Below, in pieces: positions 5,402 through 44,330 of a stretch of DNA of 64,000 nucleotides. The DNA is from Octopus bimaculoides. Lineage: Eukaryota. Made by a program: the position numbers and the translations under genes. The stretch is taken from positions 79,632,066 to 79,696,065 of the forward strand of contig NC_068987.1 in NCBI RefSeq assembly GCF_001194135.2. Reading direction: 5' to 3'. Each line of letters opens with the position of its first letter. Position 1 is the first letter of the stretch. The notes under the pieces were generated by a model. That model searched no databases. It was not told the DNA's origin and saw nothing but the letters and a program-made list of their open reading frames with translations.

Positions 5402-5700
5402 AGCATTTGCTGTAGTGGTTAAGAGCGCGAGCTACTAACTCCAAGATTTCGAGTTCGATTCCAAGCAGTGACCTGAACAATAATAATAATAATAATAATA
5501 ATGATGATGATGATGATGATAATAATAATAATAATGATGATGATGATGATAATAATAATAATAATAATGATGATGATGATAACATCGAAAAAAACCTTAA
5601 GAATGAGAACCCAGGTTCGAAATTTCCCCAAGACACCTGAAGAAGGCTGGAGGATGTATCAGTCGAATGTAAATAATGTAAATAATATAAATAAGAATAT
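5402..5700 (+). mobile_element. tRNA-headed SINE-like element with (AAT)n/(GAT)n linker and a partial hammerhead-like tail
   Basis: A-box-like GCTGTAGTGGTT; anticodon-like loop CTACTAA; B-box GTTCGATTCC at 5453-5462; trinucleotide linker 5478-5582. Then CTGAAGA (5637-5643)-A-GGCTG/CAGTC stem (5645-5664)-GAA, followed by (ATGTAAATA)-like repeats. Confidence 0.65.
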
Positions 5701-6796
5701 ATTTATCCATAACCATACTTTTCCACCCAATGTAGAGTACTGTCCCTTTCACACAATTTTTGTCGATGCTAAAGCCTTACTACAAAAGAAATAATGATGA
5801 ATTCACCATCCCAAAGCAGAGAGTCAAGATGTTTGACAGAGCGACAGAGTCACATTTAAAGAGCCACAAATCCACATCATCATCACAAGTCTTTGGTAAA
5901 AGATGAAAGGAAAAGAAAGAGGGCGTTAATACTCAGCAAAATATCTTAGAATGTTCCAACTGTCTATATTTTCAGAATATTCCAGTGTCATTCAGATCAT
6001 ATTTAGTTAGGCTGCTTTTTAGATTAATAAAAAAGAACAGTGAAAAGTGACCACAATTTCAAAAGGTTACGTACAGATACCATAAATTGATTACATGTAC
6101 AGTCGACCAAATTCAGTCTACCGACACAGAAGAATCAATGTCTTGGTAACATGTACAATACTTTCGCTAATTACTAAGCTGCCTATCATACTCCGATATC
6201 GAGACGCACTAGGTCACCTTATTCGTAAGCCAGCAAAACATCCAGGATGTAATAGCTGAAGGAACAGAGGTTTCTACTAGCACACTGGCTAGTGTTCATT
6301 ACAGCTAAGTAGCCTTGAGTAACGTGAAATGAAGTGTCTGGAATCTAAATGCTTCAATTCTGGTACGTAATGCTTGCAGTGATCGGATGAGCGAATTCTT
6401 TTAGGCTGTGGTTGACAATGTTCTTTCATATTTAAACATCGTAACAATAAAACTGCTTACGGAATATCTATACAAATCTAATTATCCATCTATACGTTTC
6501 TCAGGAGATGTACGTATATAAGGTCTAGAAAAAGCAATTTTCGATATTCATACAATTAACACACTAAAGATTATTTATCAAATTTGTGCAGTGCATTCGG
6601 GATAAAACCAGATAGGGGGAAAAACCTAACAAATAAATATACGCATATTAACGCACGTATATATATATATATATATATATATAGATAGATGTATACATAT
6701 ATATTCAGTTACATTTACGCACATTTGTGTTAATGCCGAAGATGTTGATATTGACGCTGATGTTGGTAGGGAAATTAGAGCTTTTGTTAACACTAT

Positions 6797-6870
<74 letters not shown>

Positions 6871-7817
6871 GATATATATATTTATATACACACAGAAACA
6901 AATATGTAGAAATATACATTATATATGTGCATATATTTGTGTGTATGCGATCGTGTGTGTGTATGCGTCCATTTCAATGTGTGCATATATTTGTATGTAT
7001 GCAAGTGTGTGTGTGTGTGTTACAGAGAGAGCGAGAGAGTCCATTTCCACGTGCGTATGCGTGTGTATTCCCCATTCTGCGAAAATAATAGACTCTTTAA
7101 ACGTAATTAAATAAATACTGTTTTGGCTTCTACATTAATTATTTCCAGCTCACCCTTCATACACAATTATAGAGAGCTCCTGACAACTGCCGCCATTTTG
7201 TTTTCAGCCATGTTGTGTTTGTCTCCTACTTATGCATTCCGCTGCAATTAAATAATCATTTCAAGCTTTCCCTTTTATTAATTTTGATGCATCTTTCCCT
7301 CCGTTATATCGTCATATACTAACAGATCCTATTACACTTTTCCCTCCACTAACAAACTTAATCCTATTAGATGAGCTAAGTGTTTGCAGACCCGTTTCTG
7401 CCCAAGAATTACTTTTCTTTTCACATAATTGTATTATTCCGCCCTATTTACTTTTTTTTATAATCGTTTATGTTATTTTACTTTGAATATTTTTTATCAT
7501 CCTATAGACTTATATGTATTCGCATCAACATTAAATATATTCAAAGTTAGATACCAGATCTATGGAGCTACCCTCATTTTTACACCACGGATTGCTAACA
7601 TGCAATTTTGCTCACTCTGTTAACCTTAATTCACATCAGAAGAGAAAGTAAAGGCTAACTTAGTATTTTATATCTCTCTACTGCAAATACTGAATACTAA
7701 ATGCATTTAATTTTCTTTATGATATAGAATTGCTGTCGCCGTCATATATATTGGTACCAAGCTTAAGCAGCTTTTTACTAACATGATTTCGATATATATA
7801 TATATATATATATATAT

Positions 7818-7864
7818 AATAAGCAACACGGATTTCAAAGGTTTTCAAATCCGTGTTGCTTATT
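7818..7864. repeat. Perfect 18-bp inverted repeat (hairpin) with 11-nt loop, abutting (TA)n
   Basis: AATAAGCAACACGGATTT (7818-7835) is the exact reverse complement of AAATCCGTGTTGCTTATT (7847-7864). Confidence 0.95.
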
Positions 7865-8081
7865 TTTTTGATTTTAATCACCTATCCTTTTGGGATGCGA
7901 TATTCGGGTGCCTACGCATAAGTACCATATTCAACCTTGAATCTATATCTAAACCGTATATATATATATATATTAATCAAAGAAATTCCAACTTTGATTT
8001 TCACGCTTTATTTACAATCTTATAATACGATAATATAATATAATATAATGAAATGATAGAATATTAAATGTCTATTCTGAT

Positions 8082-8126
8082 TGAACTAGTACTTTCATGC
8101 ATTAAACTATGCAATCTTCAGGTTCA
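8082..8126 (-). ncRNA. Minimal type-I hammerhead ribozyme motif
   Basis: Minus strand reads TGAAC-CTGAAGA-TTGCATAGTTTAATGCAT-GAAA-GTAC-TA-GTTCA. Stem I is TGAAC/GTTCA (5 bp). Stem II is TGCAT/ATGCA (5 bp, with a U.U closing mismatch). Stem III is the palindrome AGTACT. The predicted CUA cleavage triplet ends at 8087. Confidence 0.8.
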
Positions 8127-8494
8127 TATAGTATTCTAAATTGTAAAACATAACTGTCACNNNNNNNNNNNNNNNNNNNNNNNNNNNNNNNNNNNNNNNN
8201 NNNNNNNNNNNNNNNNNNNNNNNNNNNNNNNNNNNNNNNNNNNNNNNNNNNNNNNNNNNNNNNNNNNNNNNNNNNNNNNNNNNNNNNNNNNNNNNNNNNN
8301 NNNNNNNNNNNNNNNNNNNNNNNNNNNNNNNNNNNNNNNNNNNNNNNNNNNNNNNNNNNNNNNNNNNNNNNNNNNNNNNNNNNNNNNNNNNNNNNNNNNN
8401 NNNNNNNNNNNNNNNNNNNNNNNNNNNNNNNNNNNNNNNNNNNNNNNNNNNNNNNNNNNNNNNNNNNNNNNNNNNNNNNNNNNNNNNNNNNNNN

Positions 8495-8554
<60 letters not shown>

Positions 8555-8884
8555 ACTCTTCCTCCTTGACTCTCTCGTCACTGACACGTGACAAAAGGGA
8601 ATCTCACTTTCTGTCCACTGCCTTCCTAAAGAAAAGGCGAGTTTTTTCCGTCTCTTCTCTCATGGCACGTCTACCTAGCGTTCATAATAACAGCCCTCAC
8701 TGTTTGTTTTTACTGTCTTGTTCTCACTGTCCTGTTCTTGTTAACACTTTCACCCTCCACAAAAAATTCCAGATTTTATTTAATTTGCTTTGCGAGAAAG
8801 AGCATCATAGCCATGTCATGAGAGGAATTCTTTGGGGTTTGGATAATTCACATTTGGAAACATGGATGTTTTGTCCAACACTCT

Positions 8885-9082
8885 TCAGCAACCCTTATTC
8901 AAGGACCTTTTGAGCAGGATAGGCTACTCGACTTGAAGAAAATTCTGCAAGGTCATGCGCTGTTTACCTTGATGTGAGATCACTATGCCGCGAACATATG
9001 GTTGTGATGCATGTGCCCCTCGTGTATTTTATTAGACGGGTAGTCAAAATGGGTATACTTAGCATCCTATATTTTACCCTAG
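8885..9082. repeat. Interspersed repeat fragment, copy 1 of a local direct pair
   Basis: CTGCAAGGTCATGCGCTGTTT...CATATGGTTGTGATGCAT...GGGTAGTCA...TATATTTTACCC recurs at about 9366-9500. Confidence 0.75.
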
Positions 9083-9087
9083 TATTA

Positions 9088-9321
9088 CTTCTTATTTCTT
9101 TATTGCCCACGAGGGCCTAAACATAGAGGGGACAAACAAGGACAGACAAACGGATTAAGTCGATTACATCGACCCCAGTGCGTAACTGAAACTTAATGTA
9201 TCGACCCCGAAAGGATGAAAGGCAAAGTCAACCTCAGCGGAACTGGAACTCAGAACGTAACGGCAGACGAAACACCGCTAAGCATTTCGCCCGGCGTGCT
9301 AACGCTTCTGCCAGCTCACCC
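9088..9321 (-). mobile_element. SINE family C, near full length
   Basis: Reverse complement begins GGTGAGCTGGCAGAAGCGTTAGCACGCCGGGCGAAATGCTTAGCGG...GTTCTGAGTTCC and contains CATCCTTTCGGGGTCGATAC...CACTGGGGTCGATGTAATCGAC. Confidence 0.9.
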
Positions 9322-9339
9322 TAGTGTTACTTCGATGGG

Positions 9340-9520
9340 CTGAATAAAATTTTAACCGGCCTCCACCTGCAAGGTCATGCGCTGTTTATCTTGATGTGAG
9401 GTCACCATGTCGCGCACATATGGTTGTGATGCATCTGCCTGGTGTACCCTTATCAGATGGGTAGTCATGATGGGTATTCTGTGCTTCCTATATTTTACCC
9501 GTGTCATTTCGGTGGCATGC
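9340..9520. repeat. Interspersed repeat fragment, copy 2 of the local direct pair
   Basis: Homologous to 8947-9082, with substitutions. Confidence 0.75.
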
Positions 9521-10099
9521 ACTACTTTGTCACTCAATAATAATAATAATAATTATTTTTGTTATTGTTGTTGTTATTATTATTATGAATATTATTATTG
9601 TTATTGTCCTTGTTGTTATTTTAGTGAGCGTACACGTTTAACTTCTCTATGAAGAGCAGATGCTGTGAGATCAAATCATATGTTTTTGTCTCTTCGGTCA
9701 AGAAACAATCCTTGTGACTATTTCAGCATTTCTGTTACAACATCATCGGAGATCAATTGGTTATTTCTCTCACCACAGATGCAATGGTATGTAATAGATT
9801 ATATCAATTGATGGCATACAGAGATTCGAACAGAACTAGTTCTTTTATTAGTTAATTATTTTACATTGCCAACGATTTCATTCTAATGCAATTTAGAACA
9901 AACCAATTTACGTCTGTCCAAAGATTGCGCATATTATAAATAGATATAAACTATTTTGTCTATTATGAGGAAAATGAGTAAGAAAAAGCTGATGAAATAA
10001 AAAAAAAACATTGACACTGGTTTGGTCTGTTGTTTTCTTATTGCTACAAAGAGAGAAAAATGTGTGTTTTAACCAGAGTTACTGCATTTCACAGTGAGT

Positions 10100-10503
10100 G
10101 GGGTTCCTTGGCCCGGCAGTTCTACCGCGGGCGCTACCGGTTCGAAATAAACTCTACTTGTCCGAAATGCGCACACAATGATGAAACCGTTCTGCATGCC
10201 CACGTTCAGTGTTCGGGCAGTACTGACTTGTGCGGTTATGCCGAATAGCTGCTGTCACGTGTGAGACGGATCCGTCTGTCGGTCGCGTCTGTAGTGATGA
10301 TCGCACCGTCGCCCTCCTTCAATCGGCAGGCAAGGCAGTTTTTATTTGCCTGGTGGTTGTGGCGAAATAGGCTGTTTGATGGACAAGGCTGAAAAGCATG
10401 AGGACAGATACATTCCTCTTTGGTAGAATTCTCATTGACTTCTTCAAGATTCACTTGAAAAGGAAATTGAGAGTGGAGGGGGTGATGTCTTCGAGTGAAT
10501 TTG
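10100..10503 (+). mobile_element. L1/Tx1-clade LINE ORF2 C-terminal remnant (zf-RVT-like)
   Basis: Frameshifted translation gives SLARQFYRG/ALPVRNKLY..CPKCAHNDETVLHAHVQC..DLCGYAE*LLSRVRRIRLS..DTFLFGRILIDFFKIHLKRKLRVE. This has the C-x2-C...ET..H...C zinc finger typical of L1/Tx1 C-termini. Confidence 0.75.
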
Positions 10504-11115
10504 AAATACACTACAAAATCAACACTCCTGCTTACTGGTATGAACATCTTCCTGAGCCAGTCGCTGAAGGTAAAAATATTAGTATCCTCTCGGATTATCC
10601 AGTCAACACCGACAGAACAATCAAGGATAATCGACCACAGACATTAAAGACAGGGAAGAAAATACTTGTAATAGATCTAATAGACGTAAGTGTTCCCACT
10701 GATAAAAATATATCTGTAAAAGAATTTTACAAATTAAGTAAATACAATGACCTAGAAATTGAAATACCAAAATGTGGCATCTTAAGGCGAGAGCTGTTTC
10801 TGTCACTGTGGATGCCCTAGGCATGTTAAGAAAGGGATGTCAAAAACAATTAGAAAATATCTCAGGAGAACCATGTCTCAGAGAAATCCAAAAGATTTTG
10901 CTAATGAGCACTGCCCACATCCTTAGAAAAATCCTATCAATTTAAATGTCTGTGTTGTATTACATGAAGATATTTTGCTACAGCCCTTGCAACTTCCCTT
11001 CCCCAAGCTTTCAGTCATATTGTAACATTTCTTATCCTTCACTCGCCGTAGGACGTTGGGTGTGTCTCGTCAAGTGATTGTAACAAACATGTAGATTAAA
11101 TGTAAGTAATAACAA
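10504..11115 (+). mobile_element. R4/Dong-type RLE non-LTR retrotransposon 3' end (restriction-like endonuclease + 3' UTR)
   Basis: Translation HYKINTPAYWYEHLPEPVAEGKNISILSDYPVNTDRTIKDNRP..LIDVSVPTDKNISVKEFYKLSKYNDLEIEI, then after a frameshift ALGMLRKGCQKQLENISGEPCLREIQKILLMSTAHILRKILSI* (stop 10943-10945). The PD..D-x-K-Y-type RLE signature is recognisable; the 3' UTR ends in TAATAACAAC. Confidence 0.85.
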
Positions 11116-13505: not shown

Positions 13506-13539
<34 letters not shown>

Positions 13540-13756: not shown

Positions 13757-13791
<35 letters not shown>

Positions 13792-15740: not shown

Positions 15741-15761
15741 ATGCTTACATGCATACACACA

Positions 15762-18434: not shown

Positions 18435-18724
18435 CATATGTGTGTATGCGTGCGTGGTGTGTATGTGCTTGCGTATAAGAATGTAAGCTTGTTTAATTCA
18501 CACTATGTTAAGAAATGTCTAACAGACTCTTCCGCAGTTTAACCGAACATTTCTTATAAAACTGTTTCCCGATTTCATTCCCCAGTTGATAGCATTAACT
18601 ATTCAGTTTTCATATAAAGCACTCACAAATTACGCTATTGCCGTAGTGGATAATATTATTTCCATAGTTGTATTTTAGAAGATATACGTACATGCATAAA
18701 TACATACATACGAAACAGGAAGAG

Positions 18725-18815
18725 CTGTAAAATGTGCAGACCTTGTGGAGTTAAGCCCGAAGATATGACCCACATCATAACCAGTTGTCCAAAAATGTCT
18801 TCACGGTATTATCTA
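18725..18815 (+). mobile_element. CCHC zinc-knuckle fragment of an RLE-type (R2/R4/CRE-like) non-LTR element
   Basis: CRPCGVKPEDMTHIITSCPKMSSRYYL fits C-x2-C-x8-H-x4-C followed by a 'SSRYYL' context typical of RLE elements. The fragment is short. Confidence 0.65.
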
Positions 18816-19019: not shown

Positions 19020-19300
19020 ATGATGCATAGGTTTCAACAAACTACGACAATGGTTGTACAAATGAAACGTTTTTTCGGCATCGTGGAAGAAAGCTTAAAG
19101 AAGGGACCAATTTCGATGTCAAATGGAAAGTCTTCTCTAAATCCAAACCCTAAATTAACGGATCAGTGCGTTCGCTTGAAAACCTGTATTCATGAAAACA
19201 CTTGGGAACCCCCAACGAATACATAAATTCGAGGAAGATTTTTTTCATTATGTCTATATTTCAAAAATACATCTTGCTGGAACTTAAAACTGTACCACAA
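19020..19300 (+). mobile_element. Penelope-like element, C-terminal part of the GIY-YIG region, heavily decayed
   Basis: Frameshifted pieces HRF.., SASWK/LKEGTNFDVKWKVFSKSKP*INGSVR..LENLYS*KHLGTPNEYINSRKIFSLCLYFK resemble the PLE tail 'W.LK....F.I.WKI.....PY..G...C.LC..EK..I......LN.R.E....C.H'. Confidence 0.55.
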
Positions 19301-19571: not shown

Positions 19572-22188
19572 AGCAGTGTAGTTCGCTTGGAGCATTGTAT
19601 TATTTATATATGAGCTCGCACACACATATATATATATACACGTGTGTGTATATGTAGATGTATGTATGTATGCTTGTATGTATGTATGCATGCATGTATT
19701 TATTCAATGCCGGTTATTGGATTCAGACAATGAAGCATGGTAAACATTCAAAATGTACGATATATCGTCTGAAGAGAAACTCTATCTCTCTTGCAATTGC
19801 GTGGTAAGGAACATGATCTGAAATCATGAGCCTTAACTAAATCATTCGGAACGCAACGATAATATTTGTCATTTCGAACATCAGAAATGACCTTCTGCGT
19901 TACTCTACGTTAATTACTATCCAACCTCCTGGGGTGTTAAATGACAATTCACCTCAGCAAATACTAAAGATATATTTCTTGCCTGCACGCTCAATCCCTG
20001 GCCATCTAAGAAGGCACATACCCAATAAAGATATTTCACCATTTCATAATAACTTAAACCCTCATCGCTCCTGAAATCATTCTTCCCCATTTGTCGTAAC
20101 CTCCGCGAATTTTGTCATCCTATCTGTTAGGTATGAACGTAAACATCAATGGCATAACCAACGCTCATATCTTTAATATCTCATCTAGTTCATTCGTAAC
20201 ATATGATGGGGTTGTACAGGCGATGTATACTACTTACAACATATAACATTTAGTTCTCATCACTAACTAGAAGAAATTTACCCACCATTGTAACACCCGC
20301 AAGGCGAGCGTCTGGTGAGCAAAATACCTTCTATCGTTGTTTTATATCTCTATTCTTTCCCAAATTGCCTTCTGAATCTTAAGGCGATGGCCTGTGCTGA
20401 ATTTTTAGATTGTTCAGCAAGGAGTTCATATATGTATGTGTATGTCTGAATGTACATGGACATATATATGAATATACATGTACAGAAACACCGTTTAGAG
20501 CCTCAGGTTAAAAGCTTATAAAGGAAGCGCGTATGATTATACCATGCACAATCCAGCCTCATACCATCTCGGGGTACCCGAAAGGAGAGGGAAGAATACT
20601 CTCTCTTTTTTTTTTAACTGACAGTAACAGTTTACAGCTGAGAGAGTAGGTTTCCAGTGTATTCTGCTAACATATTTATAACTTCAGCTTTGTTGTTGTT
20701 TTTTTATCTACAGCGTATTAATATCTCTACGGGAGTTACTTTAATTTCTCGACTCACTTATGCGGAATAACTATTAGTCAACTTGATGTCTGCTTTTCTT
20801 GTTCATGGTTATGTGGGCCTACAGTAGCCGAAGTCATATGTCATACTTTATATTAGATGCAGAAATTTATTAATGCGTGCGTATGTAAAGGTGAGCGCAG
20901 TGTGCGTGTGTGTGAAGGTGCATCTGCGTGGATGTATGACCGAATAAATGCACCACTAAGTATAACGTAATTTTATTCGTAACGTTTAGGAAATATTAAC
21001 ATTAAGTTACGTACCAAACATTTTGGTGGGCTAAATTCCCTTCTTAGTGACACTTTGGAAGGAGAATGTAGTGGCTATGCTGAAACGGACGGGAGAGAGA
21101 GAGAGAGAGAGACAGACAGACAAAGACAGAGAGACAGAGAGACAGAAAGAAAGTATTATAAATAGTGATCGTTTAGATAAATAGATAGATGGGAGACTGG
21201 CTCAGCAGGTTGCTAATCAAATAGCCATGAGCAAGAAGTTAGATATAGTTAAGGATAAAAGAAAAAGAGAAAGAGATAGCATCGGTAAAAGAGAAGAGAT
21301 TGAAAGGTAAAAGATAAAGCTTTGCTCTAGAGACGAATAATTAGACATCTGATATTAAAAAAATTAGAGAAACCGAGCGACTGATACATAGAGTTACAGG
21401 AAGGTGAGGAGACAGAATAAGATTAAGAAAGAGAGTGAGAGAAAATAATCCATATATTATGTCTAGTGGCAAAATTTGATTGAGAGAAAGAAGAGAAGTA
21501 TGTATGTTCACAAGTGTGTGTGTGCGTGCTTGCATGTGTTGTGGAGGGGGAGTTAGGGAGGGAAGAAATGAAGCCAAATACTTCATTATAACAAAGGGAA
21601 ATAAGTGCAGATGAAAAGAAACATTGTATGAAATTAAACACAGAAGAAATAATAATAGAGCAGACTTAAAGTAAAATTATTAAGAATGAGTTAAAGGAAA
21701 CAGAAATAAATCACATCATTTTCCAAGGGTCCTACACGTGTAGTATTTACACATTTATTAGTACAATTTGTTTGAATTGATTTACATCTTCATATTTGTC
21801 AGTTACAAATAATTATTCATTTTTTTTGTAGTGTTTTCTTTTTTTGTAATATTTACGAAGTTTAGAACTACAAAGCTAATGTTGAACAGTAAATGTTAAA
21901 AAAAAACACTATCATAAGAATAATATACAAAACAAAATCAGAATAATATATAAAATTATGCACCAAAATTAGCGCATACCGATATATAAATATAGAAACA
22001 CATGGAGAGACACGTCTCTTTAATAGGCACAGGACTGGCTGTGTGTTAATAACCTTGCTTAGCAACCACATGGTTCCAGGTTCAGCCCCACTTCGTGGCA
22101 CCATGGACGAGTGTCTTCTGCTATAGCCTCGGGCCGACCAAAGCCTTGTGAGTGGATTTGGTAGAGGGAGACTGAAAGAAGCCTGTCG

Positions 22189-22282
<94 letters not shown>

Positions 22283-22284
<2 letters not shown>

Positions 22285-22462
22285 GGGTTGAATTCGCAAA
22301 CCGAAAACAACAGACGAAGACAGGTGGTGTAGAAAACAAATAGATGTATTAGTATAACACTCGGGAATTGAGAAAGTCTTTAACGTTTCGAGCCTACGCT
22401 CTTCCACAGAAAGGAATACAGAAAGAAACAAGGAGAGAAAAAAATGTGTGTAGTGGTCAGCG
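22283..22462 (-). mobile_element. Short non-coding element carrying a hammerhead-like motif, inserted antisense at the SINE A microsatellite
   Basis: The sequence is absent from the other family A copies (37299, 40368). Its minus-strand 3' end reads ...AACCCTATA directly into the (CA)n tract. Confidence 0.75.
22378..22413 (-). ncRNA. Minimal type-I hammerhead-like motif with variant core CUGUGGA
   Basis: Minus strand reads CTTT-CTGTGGA-A-GAGC-GTAG-GCTC-GAAA-CG-TT-AAAG. Stem I is CTTT/AAAG, stem II is GAGC/GCTC, and stem III is the ACGT palindrome. A6 is replaced by U and the triplet is GUU, so activity is uncertain. Confidence 0.6.
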
Positions 22463-23090
22463 TCCCTCCACCTTCACTTGACAACCGATGCTGGTGTGTT
22501 TACGTCCCTGTAACTTAGCGGTTCGGCAAAAGTGACTGATAGAATAAGTACTAGACTTACAAAGACTAAGTCCTGGGGTCGATTTCTTCCGCTAAAAAAA
22601 AGGGGGTGCTCCAGTCAAATCACTGAAGCAAATAAAAGAAGATATATTAATGAAGATTGAATTATATTGTATATTATATCTTGGATGGCGATGCACGAGC
22701 AGGAATCAAGTAAAATACCCGGACAGAGGTACTTCCACGCTCAGTAGTCGAGTCTTACTAAACACGCTCTGGGTTAGGTCTGCACTCCCGTATACATACT
22801 GGTTCTATGGATTGGTGAAGCGCTAAGTGTTTTGGATAGATTTTTGACACGGTATAAACACAAAGCTATTGACTGATCTGATCACCACATGAATTATTGT
22901 CGCAGCCAGCACCGCCATCACCGCCCTCGTCTTCTTCTGTCGCCGTCGTTGTCGACGTCGTCAACGTCATGATATTCATGCGCAATAGCAGCAGCATTCA
23001 AGGGGACAGTATTGACCTGTTAAATTAGAAATTACAGTATAATTAAAAATTAATGAAGAAATAGGTTAATGAGCAAAAGATTTTATATAC

Positions 23091-30974: not shown

Positions 30975-31160
30975 GTTTGTGTTTGTCAACGACCACCGCT
31001 TCACAACTGGTGTTGGTATGTTTATGTACTCGTAACTTAGTAGTTTAGCAAAAGAACTGATAGAATAAGTACCAGGCAGGTTACTATGATCCATGCAATC
31101 GCCTAAGAACCCTTGATGGCAATACCCATCACAGACCAATAACTGAAACAGGTAAAATAA
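30975..31160 (+). mobile_element. SINE family A 3' half, diverged
   Basis: CACAACTGGTGTTGGTATGTTTATGTACTCGTAACTTAG...GATAGAATAAGTACCAGG...AACTGAAACAGGTAAAA. Confidence 0.75.
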
Positions 31161-34323: not shown

Positions 34324-34361
<38 letters not shown>

Positions 34362-36930: not shown

Positions 36931-36979
36931 AATCTGTAAATATACTAAATATATTTTTATATGTATGTCTCTCTCATCC

Positions 36980-37021
<42 letters not shown>

Positions 37022-37298: not shown

Positions 37299-37468
37299 GC
37301 AGGCATGACTGTGTCGTAAGAAGCTTGCTTCCCGACCACATGGTTCCGTGTTCAGTCCCACTGCGTGGTACCTTGTGCGAGTGTCTTCTACTATAGCCTC
37401 GGGCCGACTAAGACCTTCTAGGTGGATTTGGTAGGAAACGGAAAGAAGCACGTCGCACACACACACAC

Positions 37469-37518
<50 letters not shown>

Positions 37519-37758
37519 ACACACACATATATACACACACACATACGCATACAGACACACGCACGCACGCACATATATATGCTTGTGTGTCTGTGTTTGT
37601 TCCTTCACCATCGCCTGACAACCGATGTTGGTGCGTTTGCGTCTCCGTATCTAGCTGTCGGCTTACAAAGAATAGATCCTGGAGTCAACTTGTTCGACTA
37701 AAGACGGTGCTCCAGCATGGCCACAGTCAAATGACTGAAACGAGTAAAGGAATAAAAT
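37299..37758 (+). mobile_element. SINE family A, full length with internal (CA)n linker
   Basis: Head, linker 37457-37580, and tail ending GGTGCTCCAGCATGGCCACAGTCAAATGACTGAAAC...AATAAAAT. Confidence 0.92.
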
Positions 37759-37814
37759 AATATCAAGTGGTTAGACCGCTGAACTGTACTTATTTGATAT
37801 TTCTACGCGCAATC

Positions 37815-38040
37815 GTGGCGAGCTAGCAGCATCATTGACACGCCGGGCGAAACGCTTTGCGGTATTTCGTTCGTCTTTTCGTTCTCAGTTCAAATTCCGC
37901 CGAAGTCGACTTTGCTATTCATCATTTCGGGGTCGATAGTATAAATATCAGCTGAGGACTAGGATTCGATGTAAACGACATCCCCCACTCCCTCATCCCG
38001 AATTTTCTGACTTTGATCCAAAATTTCAAACCAATATTTC
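37815..38040 (+). mobile_element. SINE family C, full length
   Basis: GTGGCGAGCTAGCAGCATCATTGACACGCCGGGCGAAACGCTT...GTTCAAATTCCGCCGAAGTCGACTTTGC...CGGGGTCGATAG. Confidence 0.9.
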
Positions 38041-38059
38041 TATACGTAAGAGAAAGCAT

Positions 38060-38180
38060 AGTTATGTAGTTAAGAAGCTCACTTTGTAATACTTCGTCAG
38101 GACGTTCAATCCCACTGCATGATACCTTCTCCTATAGGGAATTTGGTAGGTGGAAAATTTGTAGGAGCCTGCCGTATATA
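38060..38180 (+). mobile_element. SINE family A head, diverged and internally deleted
   Basis: GTAGTTAAGAAGCTC...GTTCAATCCCACTGCATGATACCTT...GAATTTGGTAGGTGGAAA...GCCTGCCGTATATA. Confidence 0.65.
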
Positions 38181-38966
38181 TATATATATATATATATATN
38201 NNNNNNNNNNNNNNNNNNNNNNNNNNNNNNNNNNNNNNNNNNNNNNNNNNNNNNNNNNNNNNNNNNNNNNNNNNNNNNNNNNNNNNNNNNNNNNNNNNNN
38301 NNNNNNNNNNNNNNNNNNNNNNNNNNNNNNNNNNNNNNNNNNNNNNNNNNNNNNNNNNNNNNNNNNNNNNNNNNNNNNNNNNNNNNNNNNNNNNNNNNNN
38401 NNNNNNNNNNNNNNNNNNNNNNNNNNNNNNNNNNNNNNNNNNNNNNNNNNNNNNNNNNNNNNNNNNNNNNNNNNNNNNNNNNNNNNNNNNNNNNNNNNNN
38501 NNNNNNNNNNNNNNNNNNNNNNNNNNNNNNNNNNNNNNNNNNNNNNNNNNNNNNNNNNNNNNNNNNNNNNNNNNNNNNNNNNNNNNNNNNNNNNNNNNNN
38601 NNNNNNNNNNNNNNNNNNNNNNNNNNNNNNNNNNNNNNNNNNNNNNNNNNNNNNNNNNNNNNNNNNNNNNNNNNNNNNNNNNNNNNNNNNNNNNNNNNNN
38701 NNNNNNNNNNNNNNNNNNNNNNNNNNNNNNNNNNNNNNNNNNNNNNNNNNNNNNNNNNNNNNNNNNNNNNNNNNNNNNNNNNNNNNNNNNNNNNNNNNNN
38801 NNNNNNNNNNNNNNNNNNNNNNNNNNNNNNNNNNNNNNNNNNNNNNNNNNNNNNNNNNNNNNNNNNNNNNNNNNNNNNNNNNNNNNNNNNNNNNNNNNNN
38901 NNNNNNNNNNNNNNNNNNNNNNNNNNNNNNNNNNNNNNNNNNNNNNNNNNNNNNNNNNNNNNNNNN

Positions 38967-39238
38967 CTTCTGGGTTTTTAATCTGTTGTCGATGTACCCG
39001 TGAGCGTTCCGATAGTGCATTACCTGTCTGGCCAACGTACAGTTCTTCACAATTAGGGCATTTGAGGCAGTAGATTAGATTTCTACTTTTGCAGTTCATG
39101 TTCGCATTGGTGAATATTTTCCCTGTTTTTGTGTTCATATATGGGCCGGTATGGATTGATCGGCATGTGCCGCATCGGCTATCATTGCATTTGGATACAG
39201 TGAATGTTTGATTTGTGTTGCTGAGGTCAAACCTTGCC
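38967..39238 (-). mobile_element. Penelope-like element: Cys linker + GIY-YIG endonuclease, open frame running into the gap
   Basis: Minus frame reads GKVDLSNTNQTFTVSKCNDSRCGTCRSIHTGPYMNTKTGKIFTNANMNCKSRNLIYCLKCPNCEELYVGQTGNALSERSRVHRQQIKNPE. It contains the C-x4-C-x2-C linker and 'NLIY-C-x2-C-x2-YVGQT...R...H' GIY-YIG motif characteristic of canonical PLE C-termini. Confidence 0.92.
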
Positions 39239-39408
39239 TATATATATATACGAAAAAGGATGGCCACTAAGTGGACATCCTTTACGATAGAAGTCAACCA
39301 TCAACGGTGAAACCACAAAACAAAACAAAAAAGAATGTTCTGCAGGAAAATTCAATGCACCCCAGAACATGAGCAAGACAAATGAAAATATCCAAAAAAT
39401 AAAGAATT

Positions 39409-39489
39409 AGTCGTAGACCAGGTTTCGCGAATTAATAGATTAACGTAATTTTTACTTGCATACCCCATCCGAGGCTCATCAGTACAACC
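39409..39489 (-). ncRNA. Type-I hammerhead ribozyme motif with enlarged stem II
   Basis: Minus strand reads GGTTGTA-CTGATGA-GC(45 nt)GC-GAAA-CCTGG-TC-TACGACT. Stem I is 7 bp (two G.U). The core is canonical, stem III is ACC-T-GGT, and the predicted GUC cleavage site is after 39416. Confidence 0.85.
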
Positions 39490-39924
39490 GTTCTATACAA
39501 TATAATTTGCAGAACAATACACGGATTGTCCACATAAAATTAGACATGTGTACAGTTCTACCGATTACATTGGAGTTCTTTTCAAAAGTCTCAGCTCTGG
39601 CGCGTTAAATACTGGAAACAATTCCGCAGAAGATAATTCACTGCAGTAACCGTTGCCGACTAGAGAACATAATTATCAAAATTAAAATAGAACTTACCTC
39701 TCCAAAAAAGCCCATATATTTTCAATGCGCAACGATTTCTCAGAGCTTCATGTCTCATAGATCAATAGCATTAAGATTCGGCAATAACAATTTTCTGATA
39801 ACCATTCAGTCAACTACGGCGATACTTCTCCTAAAGATTTGGACACGTTATGCCCTGTTTGTTTGTTTTTATCTCGTCTTAGAATTTTTTTTTTTTACTT
39901 TTTGCAGAATATAGGCCATTACGT

Positions 39925-40182
39925 TTCAGCCAGGGTTCAGAGGTCTCTCAAGCGTCCTCGTAAAAGTTTGCTGTTAAAATTTCTCTGCAATAAACTGGTT
40001 ATAATTCTACAATACACAGAATATTTGAAAATTTTTTTTAAAAATTTAGTTCCTAATATTTAGTTATAAAAATATAGTGGGACTGTCTAAAACATCAAAT
40101 GTTGTATATTAGGGTCCAGGAAAAGTAAAATAATAATCAAAGGGGTCAAAAAGCGAAAAAGAAAAATGGCTGAGAATCACTG
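39925..40182. mobile_element. hAT-type MITE, right end clear, left end decayed
   Basis: Ends AAAAATGGCTGAGAATCACTG (reverse complement CAGTGATTCTCAGCCATTTTT, a Charlie-like TIR), with subterminal GGGTCC/GGGGTC motifs. The left boundary is approximate. Confidence 0.5.
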
Positions 40183-40187
40183 GTGTA

Positions 40188-40541
40188 GGCGCAGGCGGGG
40201 CTGAGTGGCAAGAGGTTTACTCCCCACCTACATGGTTCTGCGTTCAGTCCCACTCTGTGACACCTCGGACTAATGACTTCTACTATAGCCTCAGGCCAAC
40301 CACAGTCATATGAATGGATTTGGAAGATGGAAACTGAAAGAAACCTGTACTATATGTGCATATCATAGGCGGAGGAGTAGCTGTGTGGTAAGTAGCTTGC
40401 TTACCAACCACATGGTTCCGGGTTCAGTCTCACTGCGTGGCACCTTGGGCAAGTGTCTTCTACTATAGCATCGGGCCGACCAAAGCCTTGTGAGTGGATT
40501 TGCAGACGGAAACTGAAAGAAGCCTGTCTTATATATGTATG

Positions 40542-40576
<35 letters not shown>

Positions 40577-41062
40577 GTATGTATATGTATGTATATGTGT
40601 GTATATGTTTGTGTGTCTGTACTTGTCCCGCAACATCGCTTGACAACCGATGCTGGTGTTTTTACGTTCCCGTAACTTAGCGGTTCGACAAAAGAACCGA
40701 TAGAATAAGTACTAGGCTTACAAAGAATAAGTCCTGGNNNNNNNNNNTAGGCTTACAAAGAATAAGTCCTGGGGTTGATTTGCTCGACTAAAGGCGGTGC
40801 TCCAGCATGGCCATAGTCAAATGACTGAAACAAGTAAAAGAGTAAAAGAGTATATCTATATTTGTACCCCACTACTACTTGACAAACGGTGTTGGTACAT
40901 TTATGACCCCGTAACTTAGCAGTTTCATAAGAGTGACCGATAGAACATGTACCAAGCTTTAAAAAGACATTATAATGACTAGAGTCGATTCGTTCGAAAG
41001 AAAATTCTTCAAGATGGCGCACCAGTATAGCCACTCTCTAATAACTGAAACAAGAGAAAGGT
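40188..41062 (+). mobile_element. Older SINE family A copy split by a younger family A copy (head 40188-40350, tail 40858-41062)
   Basis: The order is head - complete copy - tail; the outer parts are more diverged from the other family A copies. Confidence 0.8.
40368..40850 (+). mobile_element. SINE family A, young full-length copy nested in an older copy
   Basis: GGCGGAGGAGTAGCTGTGTGGTAAGTAGCTTGCTTACCAACCACATGGTTCCGGGTTCAG...GGCACCTTGGGCAAGTGTC...(TA)n...GGTGCTCCAGCATGGCCATAGTCAAATGACTGAAACAAGTAAAAGAGTAAAAGAG. Confidence 0.95.
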
Positions 41063-41221
41063 ATAACCGATAAAAAAAAGCAATTTCTGTTTCATGACAC
41101 CTCTAATATTTCGTTATTCGTTAAAATAAGCTTTAAGGCCGGTAAAGAGCGAACATGTCATAAACTGCTTTAACTGTTGTTAATAACATCCTACCACGGT
41201 TGCTACAGACGCTACACCTGC

Positions 41222-41253
<32 letters not shown>

Positions 41254-42071
41254 TTGCTGCTGCAGCTACTTTTTACTCTTCCTATTACTGCAATCAATGC
41301 TGCCATTAATGTTGTGTCAGCACTTAACTCAGCTTACCAACAACATAAGTAAAATCGTAAATAGATTATGAATGGTCAATATAAAGTGGGGGAAAAACCG
41401 ATCAACGAAATTCTTATCTGTGAAATGCATATGCACATACATAGGCACGCATGTACGCACTCATACCCACACTTATAAAAACAGAAACACAAACACGACT
41501 CTATATATACATACATATATATATATACTTATATACACATATAATATATATACATATATACACATACATATATATACATATACATATATATATGTATATA
41601 TATATATATGTATATATATATATGTATATATATATATGTGTGTACATATATATATTTAAATATATGTGTGCATGTGTGTGTATATTTGTATGTATGTGTG
41701 TGTGTACATGCATAAGTACGCGTGGTAAAACCGAAAATAGATCATTATGAAATGCAACCAGAGGCGAATTACTTGTGGTTTAGATATTATTCATTTAAGG
41801 CTTTTAGTCTCACCTAATCGAAATTAATCAATTTTTCATTGACTGCAAGACTGCGAGACTCAAAAGCAAATAACTTTAGACTTAGGAAGAGACACAGTCC
41901 CGTAAGTCCTTTCATATTGATTAGCAAATGCTGTATGTATGTATGTATGTATGCATGTATGTATGTATGTATGTATGTATGTATGTATGTATGTATACAT
42001 ATACAACATACATTACAATAGATTCATGCATATATGTGTGTGCATGTGTGAGTGTGTGCGCGTGTGTGTTC

Positions 42072-42147
<76 letters not shown>

Positions 42148-42382
42148 GTACGTATATGTATATATTGAGATAGGCAGGTACGTTGATAAATATATTACCC
42201 TACATGTGGGTACATGAGTGTACATGTGTGTGCATGCGTGTGTGTGTGCGTGTGCGTGGATACGTGTTGATGTGAGTGTGTTGTATACTGTTCGTATGAG
42301 TTTGTGTGAAAAAGAAAATGATGGTATGATGAAAGCACGTGGTTAAAAGAAGAAAATGCATTTAGAGTTCATTTCAACGAAA

Positions 42383-42433
<51 letters not shown>

Positions 42434-43659
42434 GTAATCAGTTGTTAGATTTTAAAGAAGCATTCATTATTACCCAGCGAATAACTTTACAATTGGCGTT
42501 CATTCATGCATGAATAATCGGCGCTGATCTGTACATTTAGTTACCATGAAAAATACCTTTGCCAAAAGCTCTATGTTCAAGCAGCTTTGATTGTGGAGTT
42601 TTTTTTCTTTACCTTTTCGTTGTCGTTTTGTTTTGTCTTTATTTCATGCCCTCTAGACACTTTTAAGAAGGTAATAAGTGTGGGCTTAAGTGCTACTTGG
42701 CCAAGAGCACATTGAACAAACACAAAGCACCTGAACTTACTTGACTGAAATATAATCATAAAGATTATCATTATCATAGTAAGAATCATAACCCTCACCG
42801 TTATTATAATCATTACTATCCGTTACTCTTATTATTACCGTGTCTGTTCCTGCTCTTATTTCTTCCCCTCTGATTTCAGTTTTTTTTTTTTTTTTAAGTA
42901 AAGAAAAATATCAGGTCAGCTTAGAGTACAATGTGGTTCGATTTCTGATAGGACTCATTTTAATTAAGGCAATTTATATGACTATAGATCTTCCAAAACG
43001 TGTAAATGAGTCACAGACCAATTTTTCATTTTCTGTTCACTCGGAGACGCTTTGGGTATAAGCAAGAGAGAGGACTCTTGTTAGGTGGAATATAAATACA
43101 TATCCTTTACTAATTTTTATAGTAAATTTAAAATTCGTATATTTTAAAATAAAACAATTTTTTGCTCAGGTTCGTTAGATTTTCAGCAACTTAAAAAAAA
43201 AAACAAGTTTTAGGCACATTTAAACAAATTTGCAGAAGTGGAAATGATGTCGACTGTAGTGGAAGTCTTCCGTCTACTCTCCTTTGCAGCAGACGGAAAA
43301 TCTTTAGATGTTTGTAACACCTCATAAGTGTTACCTCGGTCTGTGCTCTCTACTACTAGAAAGTGTTGCAAGTCACTTCGCAGAGTGATCAGGCCTGGGA
43401 TGGCATTGTTGCTTTCTTGATTAATTTAGATCAATAGCTTCATCTCTGTGTCCGAACAATTTTTGTTTTGCAGCCTCTGCAGATTTTCTGTTTTTCTGCA
43501 TCAAGTAAATCGCCGCTACCAGACAGCGCATCGCACATCGCACACATTAATATCTTATACTGTCAGGCTGGGGTAGGTCAGTATGAGGTTCGGTTCGTCA
43601 CTCTTTAGGAATGTTACAGAATGTTTTCTGGCTTCAGTGAGGAAGCTTTCTGTAACAAT

Positions 43660-44330
43660 CCTATATAGCAATGTCCCAAATCTGACCATAACCGTACCGA
43701 AACTTTTATCTCAAACAATGTAGGATTTGGTGCCCTAATTTCATCCAAGACAATTTTCAATCTGGGTTTGTTTCGCTTGCTCTGCTTTCCTGTATTTCAG
43801 TCCTATATACATATACAGAGAAATTATATATGTAGAGATTCCCATTTGGTGTACACATCAGAAGGCACGAAACACAACTTGATTTATGCTGGTTGTACAA
43901 CAGAACAATTAAACAAAAGATTCAATGGGCACAGATATTACGTCAAGCACAATAACAGTAGTTCGACAGAACCTACCGAACATTTTGCTTCAAACGGCTG
44001 CAATTTTGAAAAAGACTTGAAAGTGCATATTCTCAGAAAATATTCTGAATCTGCTACACCTTCAGTACTCAAAATGCATGAGGAGAAATGTGTTTGCGAA
44101 TTATTAACATCACGCCCTGGAAGAATGAATAAAATGACAGGAGAATAACATCAAATTTACACAAAACTGTTTGATTAAATACTCTTCGTTTTCGTTTTCC
44201 TTTTTTTCTTCCTTTTCTTTTTTCTCTGTTTTACTTTCTTTTTCTTTTTGCCAGTTGTAAAATTAAACTTTGAAGACTGATGAGGTCATTCCATCAACGT
44301 ATGGACGCTGGTTGCTCTCGTTCATATTTT
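43660..44330 (+). mobile_element. Penelope-like element GIY-YIG remnant with 3' region containing a broken hammerhead-like motif
   Basis: ORF 43768-44148 reads YICRDSHLVY...IYAGCTTEQLNKRFNGHRYYVKH...EHFASNGCNFEKDLKVHIL...EEKCVCELLTSRPGRMNK (PLE 'YVG.T...L..RF.GH...EHF...E..W...L....P.G.N'). CTGATGA at 44277-44283 is followed by a TCCAT/ATGGA hairpin, but GAAA is missing. Confidence 0.8.

What the first reader, a model, noticed from the sequence alone, without database searches (positions are those of the whole stretch)
5402..44330. Candidate system: dispersed minimal hammerhead ribozymes in short, microsatellite-anchored elements alongside Penelope GIY-YIG remnants
SEEN: five HHR-like motifs in unrelated flanking sequence (5637 +, 8082 -, 22378 -, 39409 -, 44277 +). 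The three minus-strand motifs share type-I topology and a tiny palindromic or near-palindromic stem III (AGTACT, ACGT, ACCTGGT). Each is followed about 100-170 nt downstream by an abrupt end at a (TA)n or TATA-(CA)n tract. The window also holds three PLE GIY-YIG remnants (19020, 38967, 43768), two of them within ~300 nt of an HHR motif. KNOWN: PLE pseudo-LTRs carry minimal type-I HHRs whose palindromic stem III allows cleavage as dimers. INFERENCE: this genome hosts several non-autonomous, ribozyme-bearing PLE parasites (retrozyme-like) that insert into, or seed, TA microsatellites. That would link ribozymes, PLEs and the extreme microsatellite load. Whether these particular families are already catalogued is unknown to me.
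Basis: partly seen in the sequence, partly recalled or inferred. Interest (0 to 1): 0.85.

Follow-up and report, generated by a model that had tools for sequence, protein, structure and literature searches.

The report
Penelope retrotransposon tails with hammerhead motifs
The window holds decayed 3' end fragments of Penelope-like retrotransposons, a few of which still carry the small hammerhead-ribozyme motif typical of these elements and lie in TA/CA microsatellites; this layout is already described for such elements, so the finding is real but ordinary.

Summary
The finding is partly real.

**Hammerhead-like motifs (five reported)**
- 8129-8079(-) is a complete type-I hammerhead with a palindromic helix III.
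- 22413-22378(-) has the same architecture with one core substitution (CUGUGGA).
- 39489-39409(-) has both core boxes, a 7-bp stem I and a near-palindromic helix III. Its "helix II" is a 49-nt stretch with little structure.
- 44277(+) is a CUGAUGA box 119 nt from a GAAAUAU box. Both boxes are conserved in the closest outside copy, but the fold is not.
- 5637(+) is not a hammerhead.

**GIY-YIG remnants (three reported)**
- Two are confirmed. 39238-38967(-) is Neptune-type, with a CX4CxxC linker. 43831-44148(+) is the C-terminus of 1200-1460-aa RT+GIY-YIG proteins.
- 19020 is not supported.
- A further remnant lies at 2790-2900(+).

**Outside evidence**
Related PLE copies from other invertebrate assemblies carry the same hammerhead architecture in their 3' UTRs, about 40-90 nt before a (TA)n in three of the five loci. 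A covariance model built only from those copies ranks 8129-8079 first in the window (E about 0.08).

**Interpretation**
The 22413 element sits inside a SINE's internal microsatellite. The best reading is 5'-truncated PLE tails inserted into microsatellites, as published in 2014 and 2021. There are no tandem repeats, so these are not retrozymes. Interest is low.

The parts
8079..8129 (-). Complete minimal type-I hammerhead motif. Stem I 8126-8122 with 8086-8082; CUGAAGA 8121-8115; stem II 8113-8109 with 8102-8098, flanked by U.U; GAAA 8096-8093; palindrome AGUACU 8093-8088; predicted cleavage after A8087.
   Evidence: Descriptor scans. Top window hit of model R2, built only from outside PLE hammerheads: 18.1 bits, E about 0.08. 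The centroid fold gives stems I and II.
7957..8078 (-). Tail of the 8129 element, ending in an 8-bp hairpin (AATCAAAG/CTTTGATT) and (TA)8 at 7973-7957.
   Evidence: The upstream extent is unknown because gap 8161-8494 starts 32 nt 5' of the motif.
22378..22413 (-). Hammerhead-like motif with one core substitution. CUUU/CUGUGGA (22409-22403)/A/GAGC-GUAG-GCUC/GAAA/CG/U/U/AAAG; ACGU is palindromic.
   Evidence: The one-mismatch palindrome descriptor finds it against 0.01 expected. It has the unpaired nucleotide after A9 and the G10.1-C11.1 pair listed for PLE hammerheads in PMC4209133.
22281..22452 (-). Element of about 170 bp that carries the 22413 motif, inserted in the internal (CA)n/(TA)n of a SINE copy. 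Boundaries are approximate. Microsatellite 22189-22280; SINE head 22031-22187; SINE tail 22474-22576.
   Evidence: SINE head and tail BLAST. Two other full SINE copies have only 89-156 bp between head and tail; for 40372-40737 that interval reads as microsatellite. Sequence.
39409..39489 (-). Hammerhead-core motif with an expanded 'helix II'. GGUUGUA/CUGAUGA (39482-39476)/49 nt/GAAA/CCUGG/U/C/UACGACU.
   Evidence: The 49-nt segment has only 2 closing bp and z +0.47. Not found by R2.
39239..39408 (-). Tail after the 39489 motif. It contains a 14-nt-arm hairpin (39283-39255), then (TA)6 at 39250-39239, which abuts or overlaps the start of the next PLE fragment.
38967..39238 (-). 5'-truncated Neptune-type PLE copy: RT-EN linker with CX4CxxC (CNDSRCGTC), and a GIY-YIG core with an internal CxxC. 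It is cut by gap 38200-38966.
   Evidence: Pfam GIY-YIG E=0.0016. Homologues at 75% identity. Longer homologues have HTH_animal upstream and end just after the EN domain. tblastn E=2e-43.
43831..44178 (+). C-terminal GIY-YIG EN remnant of a second PLE family, without the internal CC. There is a premature stop at 44146-44148; homology to relatives continues to ...KLFD* near 44178.
   Evidence: 138 homologues, 22 of them at E<=1e-10. [quoted passage not shown] The family HMM scores 148 bits. Alignment with L004 and L005.
44179..44465 (+). 3' UTR of that PLE copy. UUGAAG 44270-44275; CUGAUGA 44277-44283; GAAAUAU 44403-44409; C 44410; CUUCAA 44411-44416. It ends at (AAT)n.
   Evidence: Both boxes are conserved in L005/L006, but position 17 is G there and stem I is not kept. 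L004, L007 and L010 lack the first box.
2790..2900 (+). The CA-rich sequence downstream has no hammerhead box.
   Evidence: tblastn E about 3e-10. Sequence. CUGANGA list.

Best explanation
These are dead, mostly 5'-truncated copies of Penelope-like retrotransposons (PLEs) from at least two families. One is Neptune-type, with a CX4CxxC linker before a C-terminal GIY-YIG endonuclease (EN). The other encodes a long RT+GIY-YIG protein whose endonuclease lacks the internal cysteine pair.

**How the layout arises (established knowledge)**
PLEs copy themselves by target-primed reverse transcription starting at the RNA's 3' region. Incomplete copies therefore keep the 3' UTR and lose the 5' part. That 3' UTR (the 'pseudo-LTR') carries a minimal type-I hammerhead whose helix III is a short palindrome, so two copies in one tandem transcript can pair to form the active ribozyme. 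The endonuclease of several PLE clades prefers (TA)n and related microsatellites.

**What is shown here**
- The motifs and their positions.
- The endonuclease homologies.
- The same hammerhead architecture, and in three of the five loci a (TA)n end, in related outside copies.
- One insertion inside a pre-existing microsatellite.

**What is inferred**
- The three short minus-strand pieces are truncated PLE tails rather than independent elements.
- As isolated, partly mutated single copies they no longer cleave.
For: **Endonuclease remnants**
- The two EN fragments are homologous to PLE proteins.
- Relatives of the 39238-38967 fragment end right after the EN domain and carry the post-RT HTH_animal region upstream.

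**Hammerheads in outside PLE copies**
- Sites: L015:4644-4684 and its inverted partner 828-868, L016:1035-1081, L017:2129-2177 (Pinctada imbricata), L018:2277-2320, and L019:2214-2249 with 532-567.
- All read stem I/CUGAAGA (UUGAAGA in L017)/variable stem II/GAAA/4-nt palindrome/U/H/stem I. In L015, L017 and L019 this lies about 40-90 nt before a (TA)n.
- Stem I and stem II covary among them: 8 of 12 pairs change on both sides, 0 of 500 shuffles reach the observed score, and slid controls drop to 37-47% paired.

**Window motifs**
- Model R2, built without any window sequence, puts 8129-8079 first in the window.
- L016, the outside copy with a readable 3' UTR whose EN is closest to the window's (61% aa identity), has the same U...U-flanked stem II as 8129-8079.
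- Motif counts exceed shuffles.
- The three minus-strand motifs lie 92-149 nt from a TA/CA tract, against p=0.12 each by chance.
- The 22413 element lies inside a SINE's internal microsatellite.
- The second-family full-length copy L003 has the same tail at both ends and stops at (TA)n.

**Literature**
PMC4209133 (PLE hammerheads, mostly single truncated copies, active only as dimers); PMC8557442 ((TA)n bias; split 'HHR_half_core' at 35-50 nt); PMC11167929 (3'-internal initiation, tails).
Against: - No reverse-transcriptase remnant is detectable in the window.
- For 8129-8079 and 22413-22378 there is no adjacent PLE coding sequence. Their assignment rests on motif architecture and on the tail plus microsatellite layout.
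- None of the tails has detectable nucleotide similarity to the outside PLE 3' UTRs.
- R2's E-value for 8129-8079 is only about 0.08 and is rough. R2 does not find the other motifs.
- 8129-8079 lacks the G10.1-C11.1 pair that PMC4209133 calls highly conserved.
- 39489-39409 and 44277-44416 lack a credible helix II.
- Thermodynamic z-scores are unremarkable.
- The descriptors were fixed after seeing the motifs.
- Gaps hide the 5' side of the 8129 element and the 3' UTR of the 38967 copy.
Confidence: 0.8

Rival explanations
1. The short hammerhead-bearing pieces are independent non-autonomous elements (retrozyme-like or SINE-like) that borrow PLE enzymes and spread as ribozyme-processed, possibly circular, RNAs.
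For: - The 22413 element is only about 170 bp, with clean microsatellite flanks.
- Neither 8129 nor 22413 has adjoining PLE coding sequence.
- The literature links animal retrozymes to PLE pseudo-LTRs (PMC7229834; 10.64898/2026.07.22.740005).
Against: - Animal retrozymes are defined by tandem 150-450-bp monomers, each with a hammerhead (PMC7229834). No tandem or second copy exists in the window.
- Severe 5' truncation gives the same picture.
- Two of the motifs lie directly next to PLE EN remnants.
- One 64-kb window cannot show a fixed 5' end or a copy number.
Confidence: 0.12
2. The motifs are chance matches in AT-rich, repeat-rich DNA and have nothing to do with ribozymes.
For: - Rfam finds no hammerhead at any threshold tried.
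- Fold energies equal those of shuffles.
- 5637 is a bare CUGAAGA.
- 22 CUGANGA boxes occur in the window.
- The best independent E-value is only about 0.08.
Against: - Structured descriptors give 2 loci against 0.01-0.095 expected.
- The architecture of 8129-8079 matches the hammerheads of homologous PLEs elsewhere, down to the U...U-flanked stem II.
- Rfam also misses those outside hammerheads.
- The motifs co-locate with EN remnants and microsatellites.
Confidence: 0.05
3. 39489-39409 and 44277-44416 are working hammerheads of an unusual kind, with a large insertion (49 or 119 nt) in helix II.
For: - Both core boxes, a 6-7-bp stem I and a (near-)palindromic helix III are present.
- Both boxes of the 44277 motif are kept in the closest relative, L005/L006.
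- The 147-nt stretch folds somewhat better than shuffles (z -1.72).
- Similar split cores at 35-50 nt were noted in Naiad PLEs (PMC8557442).
Against: - The 49-nt insert is closed by 2 bp and is unstructured.
- In L005 position 17 is G and stem I is not kept.
- More distant relatives lack the first box.
- Conservation of two 7-mers at about 75% overall identity is weak evidence.
- Stem I of the 44277 motif needs a bulge next to the core.
Confidence: 0.03

Closest known systems
Minimal type-I hammerheads of Penelope-like elements (Cervera & de la Pena 2014, PMC4209133)
   Same: - Type-I topology, short stem I (4-7 bp), and a tiny palindromic helix III (AGUACU, ACGU, AUAU).
- An unpaired nucleotide after A9 in 22413-22378. 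In 8129-8079 the base after A9 (U8114) is also unpaired, but opposite another unpaired U.
- Mostly single dispersed copies attributed to truncated PLEs, and predicted to act only as dimers.
   Different: - 8129-8079 has U.U in place of the G10.1-C11.1 pair.
- 22413-22378 has U at invariant A6.
- 39489 and 44277 have 49- and 119-nt segments where helix II should be.
- No cleavage data exist for any of them.
Neptune-clade PLEs (CX2-5CxxC linker plus CCHH GIY-YIG EN; (TA)n-linked targeting; Arkhipova 2006 as cited in PMC8557442)
   Same: - The 39238-38967 fragment has CX4CxxC followed by a GIY-YIG core with an internal CxxC.
- Relatives have a C-terminal EN.
- The 3' ends of relatives L015, L017 and L019 abut (TA)n.
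   Different: - Only about 90 aa survive in the window, and no RT is present.
- Clade assignment rests on the linker and EN motifs only. No RT phylogeny was done, and Naiad endonucleases are reported to be nearly indistinguishable from Neptune ones.
Hydra-clade PLEs (PMC8557442)
   Same: The 43831-44148 EN is C-terminal and lacks the internal CC of other PLE endonucleases. The full-length relative L003 ends in (TA)n and has the same tail at both ends.
   Different: - Hydra elements are described as short (<3 kb) with canonical hammerheads.
- Relatives here encode 1200-1460 aa, and L003 shows only a degenerate hammerhead-like stretch.
- Membership in this clade was not tested.
Metazoan non-LTR retrozymes (Cervera & de la Pena 2020, PMC7229834; Li et al. 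2026 preprint)
   Same: Type-I hammerheads, low GC content, and a proposed dependence on or descent from PLE pseudo-LTRs.
   Different: Retrozymes are tandem arrays of 150-450-bp monomers expressed as circular RNAs. The window's motifs are single, non-repeated, and partly adjacent to PLE coding remnants.

Membership tests
Hammerhead ribozyme, type I (PLE minimal variant) | Conserved core: CUGANGA ... GAAA ... U-H(not G) | tested here: met
   - Met by 8129-8079 and 39489-39409.
- Not met by 22413-22378 (CUGUGGA, A6 to U) or by 5637 (no GAAA).
- 44277 has both boxes, but they are 119 nt apart.
Hammerhead ribozyme, type I (PLE minimal variant) | Three-way junction: stem I closing the motif, and a hairpin stem II between the two boxes | tested here: inconclusive
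   - 8129-8079: stem I 5 bp, stem II 5 bp with a U.U closing mismatch.
- 22413-22378: stem I 4 bp, stem II 4 bp.
- 39489-39409: stem I 7 bp, but only 2 bp close a 49-nt segment.
- 44277: stem I needs a bulge, and helix II closure is 3 bp, two of them G.U (read from the sequence).
Hammerhead ribozyme, type I (PLE minimal variant) | Short palindromic helix III that allows dimer formation (PMC4209133) | tested here: met
   AGUACU (8093-8088), ACGU (22413 motif) and AUAU (44406-44409) are palindromic. ACCUGGU (39489 motif) is palindromic apart from a central U.
Hammerhead ribozyme, type I (PLE minimal variant) | [quoted passage not shown] | tested here: inconclusive
   Both are present in 22413-22378 (A, then GAGC/GCUC). 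8129-8079 has U...U flanking UGCAU/AUGCA and no G-C closing pair; the outside PLE hammerhead L016 shares this.
Hammerhead ribozyme, type I (PLE minimal variant) | Match to curated Rfam hammerhead models | tested here: not met
   No hit at gathering threshold. No hit at E<=10 in 221-nt and 301-nt searches around 8121 and 39482. As a control, Rfam also misses the hammerheads of outside PLE copies L015-L019, so the test has little power for this variant.
Hammerhead ribozyme, type I (PLE minimal variant) | Self-cleavage at H17 (as monomer or dimer) | not testable with these tools
   Needs in vitro transcription of monomer and tandem-dimer constructs.
Penelope-like element (EN+) | GIY-YIG endonuclease of PLE type | tested here: met
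   - 38967-39238(-): Pfam GIY-YIG E=0.0016, tblastn E=2e-43, CX4CxxC plus an internal CxxC.
- 43831-44148(+): family HMM 148 bits; relatives are RT+GIY-YIG proteins.
- 2790-2900(+): tblastn E about 3e-10.
- 19020: not met.
Penelope-like element (EN+) | PLE/telomerase-like reverse transcriptase | tested here: not met
   tblastn of 258 fetched proteins, including full-length RT-bearing ones (P0013, P0048, P0051, P0064), hits only EN regions in the window. The copies are truncated or cut by gaps.
Penelope-like element (EN+) | Pseudo-LTR or partial tandem arrangement, with a hammerhead in the repeat | tested here: inconclusive
   - 39489 motif + tail + (TA)6 + 5'-truncated EN copy is a tail-to-head layout, but the downstream copy's own 3' UTR lies in gap 38200-38966, so identity of the two tails cannot be checked.
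- Outside copies L003, L015 and L019 do show direct or inverted partner copies with the same tail or hammerhead.
Penelope-like element (EN+) | Insertion bias for (TA)n and related microsatellites (PMC8557442) | tested here: met
   - Distances of 92-149 nt to a TA/CA tract, against p=0.12 per site by chance.
- The 22413 element lies within a SINE-internal microsatellite.
- L003, L015, L017 and L019 end in (TA)n.
Metazoan non-LTR retrozyme | Tandem repeats of 150-450-bp monomers, each with a type-I hammerhead (PMC7229834) | tested here: not met
   Self-BLAST finds no second copy of any motif-bearing segment in the window. TRF finds only short-unit repeats (periods 2 and 5) around 8129. Caveat: gap 8161-8494 could hide a neighbouring copy.
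Metazoan non-LTR retrozyme | Expression as small circular RNAs | not testable with these tools
   No transcriptome data are available here.

The most novel reading that the evidence does not exclude
The split-core motifs (39489-39409 with a 49-nt insert; 44277-44416 with a 119-nt insert, both boxes kept in the nearest relative) could be a working hammerhead variant with a large, loosely structured helix II domain that PLE tails in this lineage maintain. In addition, the long hairpins that directly precede (TA)n in the tails at 39283-39255 and 7864-7818 could be the 3' recognition signal for the PLE enzyme.
Probability: 0.05. Interest if true: 0.45.

Novelty: new member of a known kind. Interest (0 to 1): 0.15.

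Why it matters
It matters little beyond annotation. These pieces should be masked as Penelope-like element remnants, and the hammerhead-like motifs should not be read as host ribozyme genes.

The window gives a clean single-locus example of a PLE tail inserted into a microsatellite that already existed inside a SINE. This supports microsatellite targeting rather than microsatellite seeding.

It also shows that Rfam's hammerhead models do not detect PLE-type minimal hammerheads, which is useful to know when scanning invertebrate genomes.

Tried and rejected
**Searches that found nothing**
- Rfam at gathering and at E<=10, on the whole window and on two short stretches: no hammerhead. The control on outside PLE hammerheads was also negative.
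- Word-index homologue search with the 43768 ORF: nothing. The exhaustive search worked instead.
- Metagenome scan for relatives of the Neptune-type EN: nothing.
- BLAST of motif flanks against the window and against the first four fetched loci (L001-L004): no shared tails.
- A literature look-up of the SRA run prefix of the closest outside contigs returned an unrelated paper. The host species is not established; the SINE and the composition suggest a mollusc, but only from memory.

**Modelling limits**
- MAFFT could not align five outside hammerheads in register. I built a two-sequence model, let Infernal align the others, and rebuilt.
- The two-sequence model R1 gave 8129-8079 only 11 bits.
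- Thermodynamic z-scores gave no signal.

**Ideas dropped**
- I considered that the 39238-38967 fragment was the N-terminus of a Naiad element. Longer homologues have RT-side sequence upstream and stop just after the EN domain, so I rejected this.
- I considered that the (TA)6 at 39250-39239 was a pure target-site tract. It partly aligns with PLE codons in L001 and L016, so this is left open.
- A shared 8-mer (GCGTAGGC) between 7900-7930 and the 22413 motif, and the AAGACTT..TCTCAATTCC resemblance to L003, are within chance.

Full report
**Setting**

The window is AT-rich and broken by 18 assembly gaps. It carries about 1.9 TA/CA tracts per kb of read sequence. It also holds many copies of a SINE that has a tRNA-like head, an internal microsatellite and a conserved tail. 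The host species was not established.

**The five motifs**

- 5637(+) is only a CUGAAGA box. There is no GAAA and no stem I.
- 8129-8079(-) reads UGAAC/CUGAAGA/U-UGCAU-aguuua-AUGCA-U/GAAA/GUAC/U/A/GUUCA. This is a complete type-I hammerhead, with a palindromic AGUACU where helix III should be.
- 22413-22378(-) reads CUUU/CUGUGGA/A-GAGC-guag-GCUC/GAAA/CG/U/U/AAAG. The architecture is the same. It has the extra base after position 9 and a G-C closing pair, but U replaces the invariant A6.
- 39489-39409(-) has CUGAUGA, GAAA, CCUGG-U-C and a 7-bp stem I. Between the boxes lie 49 nt closed by only 2 bp, and this segment folds no better than shuffles.
- 44277(+) is CUGAUGA with no nearby GAAA. A GAAAUAU-C box lies 119 nt downstream, and UUGAAG/CUUCAA could form stem I if one A is bulged.

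**Chance and curated models**

A relaxed descriptor finds 2 loci against 0.095 expected in dinucleotide shuffles (0 of 200 reach 2). A descriptor that requires a palindromic helix III and allows one core mismatch finds exactly 8121 and 22409, against 0.01 expected. Both descriptors were fixed after seeing the motifs.

Rfam finds no hammerhead at gathering threshold. It also finds none at E<=10 in 221-nt and 301-nt searches around 8121 and 39482. It likewise misses the hammerheads of more intact outside PLE copies, so this negative has little weight for the PLE variant.

**Coding remnants**

39238-38967(-) encodes ...ARFDLSNTNQTFTVSKCNDSRCGTC...NLIYCLKCPNCEELYVGQTGNALSERSRVHRQQI. That is a CX4CxxC linker followed by a GIY-YIG core with an internal CxxC (Pfam E=0.0016; 75%-identical homologues). 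A profile search gave 295 relatives. Longer ones (P0143, P0204, P0153) carry the post-RT region (HTH_animal...SKRQPxNLKRLLTKAKF) upstream and end just after the EN domain. The fragment is therefore a 5'-truncated PLE with a C-terminal endonuclease of the Neptune type. It runs into gap 38200-38966.

43831-44148(+) is the C-terminal GIY-YIG of a second family that lacks the internal CC. It has 138 homologues, and full-length relatives of 1200-1460 aa have RVT_1 plus a C-terminal GIY-YIG. One such copy, L003, has the same tail at both ends and stops at (TA)n.

The claimed remnant at 19020 has no support from Pfam, from tblastn with 258 PLE proteins, or from family HMMs. A further Neptune-type EN end lies at 2790-2900(+). 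No RT remnant was detected.

**Outside copies give the key evidence**

Contigs that encode relatives of the Neptune-type EN carry a type-I hammerhead in the 3' UTR:

- L015: UAUUUACUUUC/CUGAAGA/UCAAUGGA/GAAA/CAUG/U/A/GAAAGUAAAUA, in both a direct and an inverted copy.
- L016: UUCAC/CUGAAGA/U-UGUU-guaa-AACA-U/GAAA/GAUC/U/U/GUGAA.
- L017 (Pinctada imbricata): CUCC/UUGAAGA/GUCCA...UGGAU/GAAA/ACGU/U/A/GGAG.
- L018: AUUUCCA/CUGAAGA/GCC...GGC/GAAA/ACGU/U/A/UGGAAAU.
- L019: AUUGCC/CUGAAGA/UAG/GAAA/CCGG/U/U/GGCAAU.

In L015, L017 and L019 these lie about 40-90 nt before a (TA)n. L016's contig ends first, and L018 has only AT-rich sequence there.

Among the four distinct sequences in alignment A6, 8 of 12 pairs change on both sides. 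No shuffle of 500 reaches the observed covariation, and sliding the partners drops pairing from 92% to 37-47%. The alignment was fitted to the model, which favours the structure somewhat.

A covariance model built only from these outside sequences (R2) puts 8129-8079 first in the window at 18.1 bits, with a rough E of about 0.08. It does not find the other motifs. L016 shares with 8129-8079 the unusual U...U-flanked stem II.

**The second-family 3' UTR**

The closest copy (L005/L006) keeps both the CUGAUGA and CGAAAUAU boxes. However, it has G at position 17 and a different stem I. More distant copies (L004, L007, L010) lack the first box. At the place homologous to window 44385-44410, L007 has CUUGAAGAA-GACAG-cauu-CUGUU-GAAA-CGU-C, a near-hammerhead. 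The 44277 motif is therefore best called a degenerate or unresolved PLE 3'-UTR hammerhead region.

**Microsatellites**

The three minus-strand motifs lie 102, 92 and 149 nt upstream of a TA/CA tract. A random position does so with p=0.12.

The 22413 element (about 22452-22281) lies between the head (22031-22187) and tail (22474-22576) of a SINE copy, next to its internal (CA)n(TA)n. The two other full SINE copies have only 89-156 bp between head and tail; for 40372-40737 that interval reads as microsatellite. The element therefore entered an existing microsatellite and did not create it.

The (TA)6 at 39250-39239 is less clean. It aligns in part with the codons for ...RLLTK... in L001 and L016. 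It may be the junction of a truncated copy with a target tract, or an internal AT-rich stretch.

**Retrozyme test**

No motif-bearing segment has a second copy or a tandem partner in the window. This defining retrozyme feature (PMC7229834) is not met, with the caveat that gap 8161-8494 starts 32 nt from the 8129 motif.

**Interpretation**

These are 5'-truncated PLE tails from at least two families, lodged in microsatellites.

The mechanism below is established knowledge and was not shown here. PLEs reverse-transcribe from the 3' region (PMC11167929), so short copies keep the 3' UTR with its hammerhead. The palindromic helix III permits cleavage only when two copies pair (PMC4209133). Several PLE clades target (TA)n (PMC8557442).

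As isolated and partly mutated copies, the window's motifs are most likely inactive relics. Split cores such as 39489-39409 resemble the 'HHR_half_core' cases noted for Naiad PLEs (PMC8557442).

**Verdict**

The system is already described in the literature, so interest is low.

Noticed in passing
window 2790-2900 (+): An extra Neptune-type PLE endonuclease C-terminal remnant (...FLVFPLYQRSDNTTDQTRINRENNLIQKYRPQLN) that starts at gap 2125-2788. The CA-rich sequence downstream shows no hammerhead box.
   Followed up: partly
window 22031-22576, 37309-37652, 40372-40737 (+). Fragments at 1310-1454(-), 30994-31077, 40200-40348, 40878-40967, 48366-48486, 55037-55122.: An abundant SINE with a tRNA-like head, an internal TA/CA microsatellite of about 90-150 bp, and a conserved tail. 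ARAGORN calls no tRNA in the window.
   Followed up: partly
window 39283-39255, 7864-7818 and 7996-7974 (all minus strand): On the minus strand, long hairpins (14-nt arms at 93%, 22-nt arms at 95%, and an 8-bp stem) sit immediately before (TA)n tracts. Two of them end hammerhead-bearing tails. This is not seen at the ends of the outside PLE tails and remains unexplained.
   Followed up: partly
window about 18690-18790 (+): The peptide CRPCGVKPEDMTHIITSCP has a CxxC...H...C pattern. From memory this resembles the C-terminal zinc knuckle of some LINE ORF2 proteins.
   Followed up: no
L017:2129-2177 (Pinctada imbricata) and L007 (near position 760): PLE 3'-UTR hammerhead motifs whose first box is UUGAAGA (U at position 3 with G8 retained) instead of CUGAAGA.
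   Followed up: no
L015-L019 (outside loci): Rfam release 15 hammerhead models give no match at E<=10 to hammerhead motifs of more intact PLE copies. Stem II in these motifs ranges from 0 to 5 bp (L019 has only UAG between the two core boxes).
   Followed up: yes
window 5400-5470 (+): A tRNA-like stretch (…GTGGTTAAGAGCGCGAGCTACTAACTCCAAGATTTCGAGTTCGATTCC…) followed by (AAT/GAT)n, just upstream of the rejected 5637 motif. It is probably a different SINE.
   Followed up: no
L001:1381-1450 (minus strand): On the strand opposite a decayed Neptune-type EN copy: CUGAUGA-A-GGGACCAG...CUGGCC-GAAG, a hammerhead-like stretch with GAAG in place of GAAA. It may belong to an inverted partner copy.
   Followed up: no
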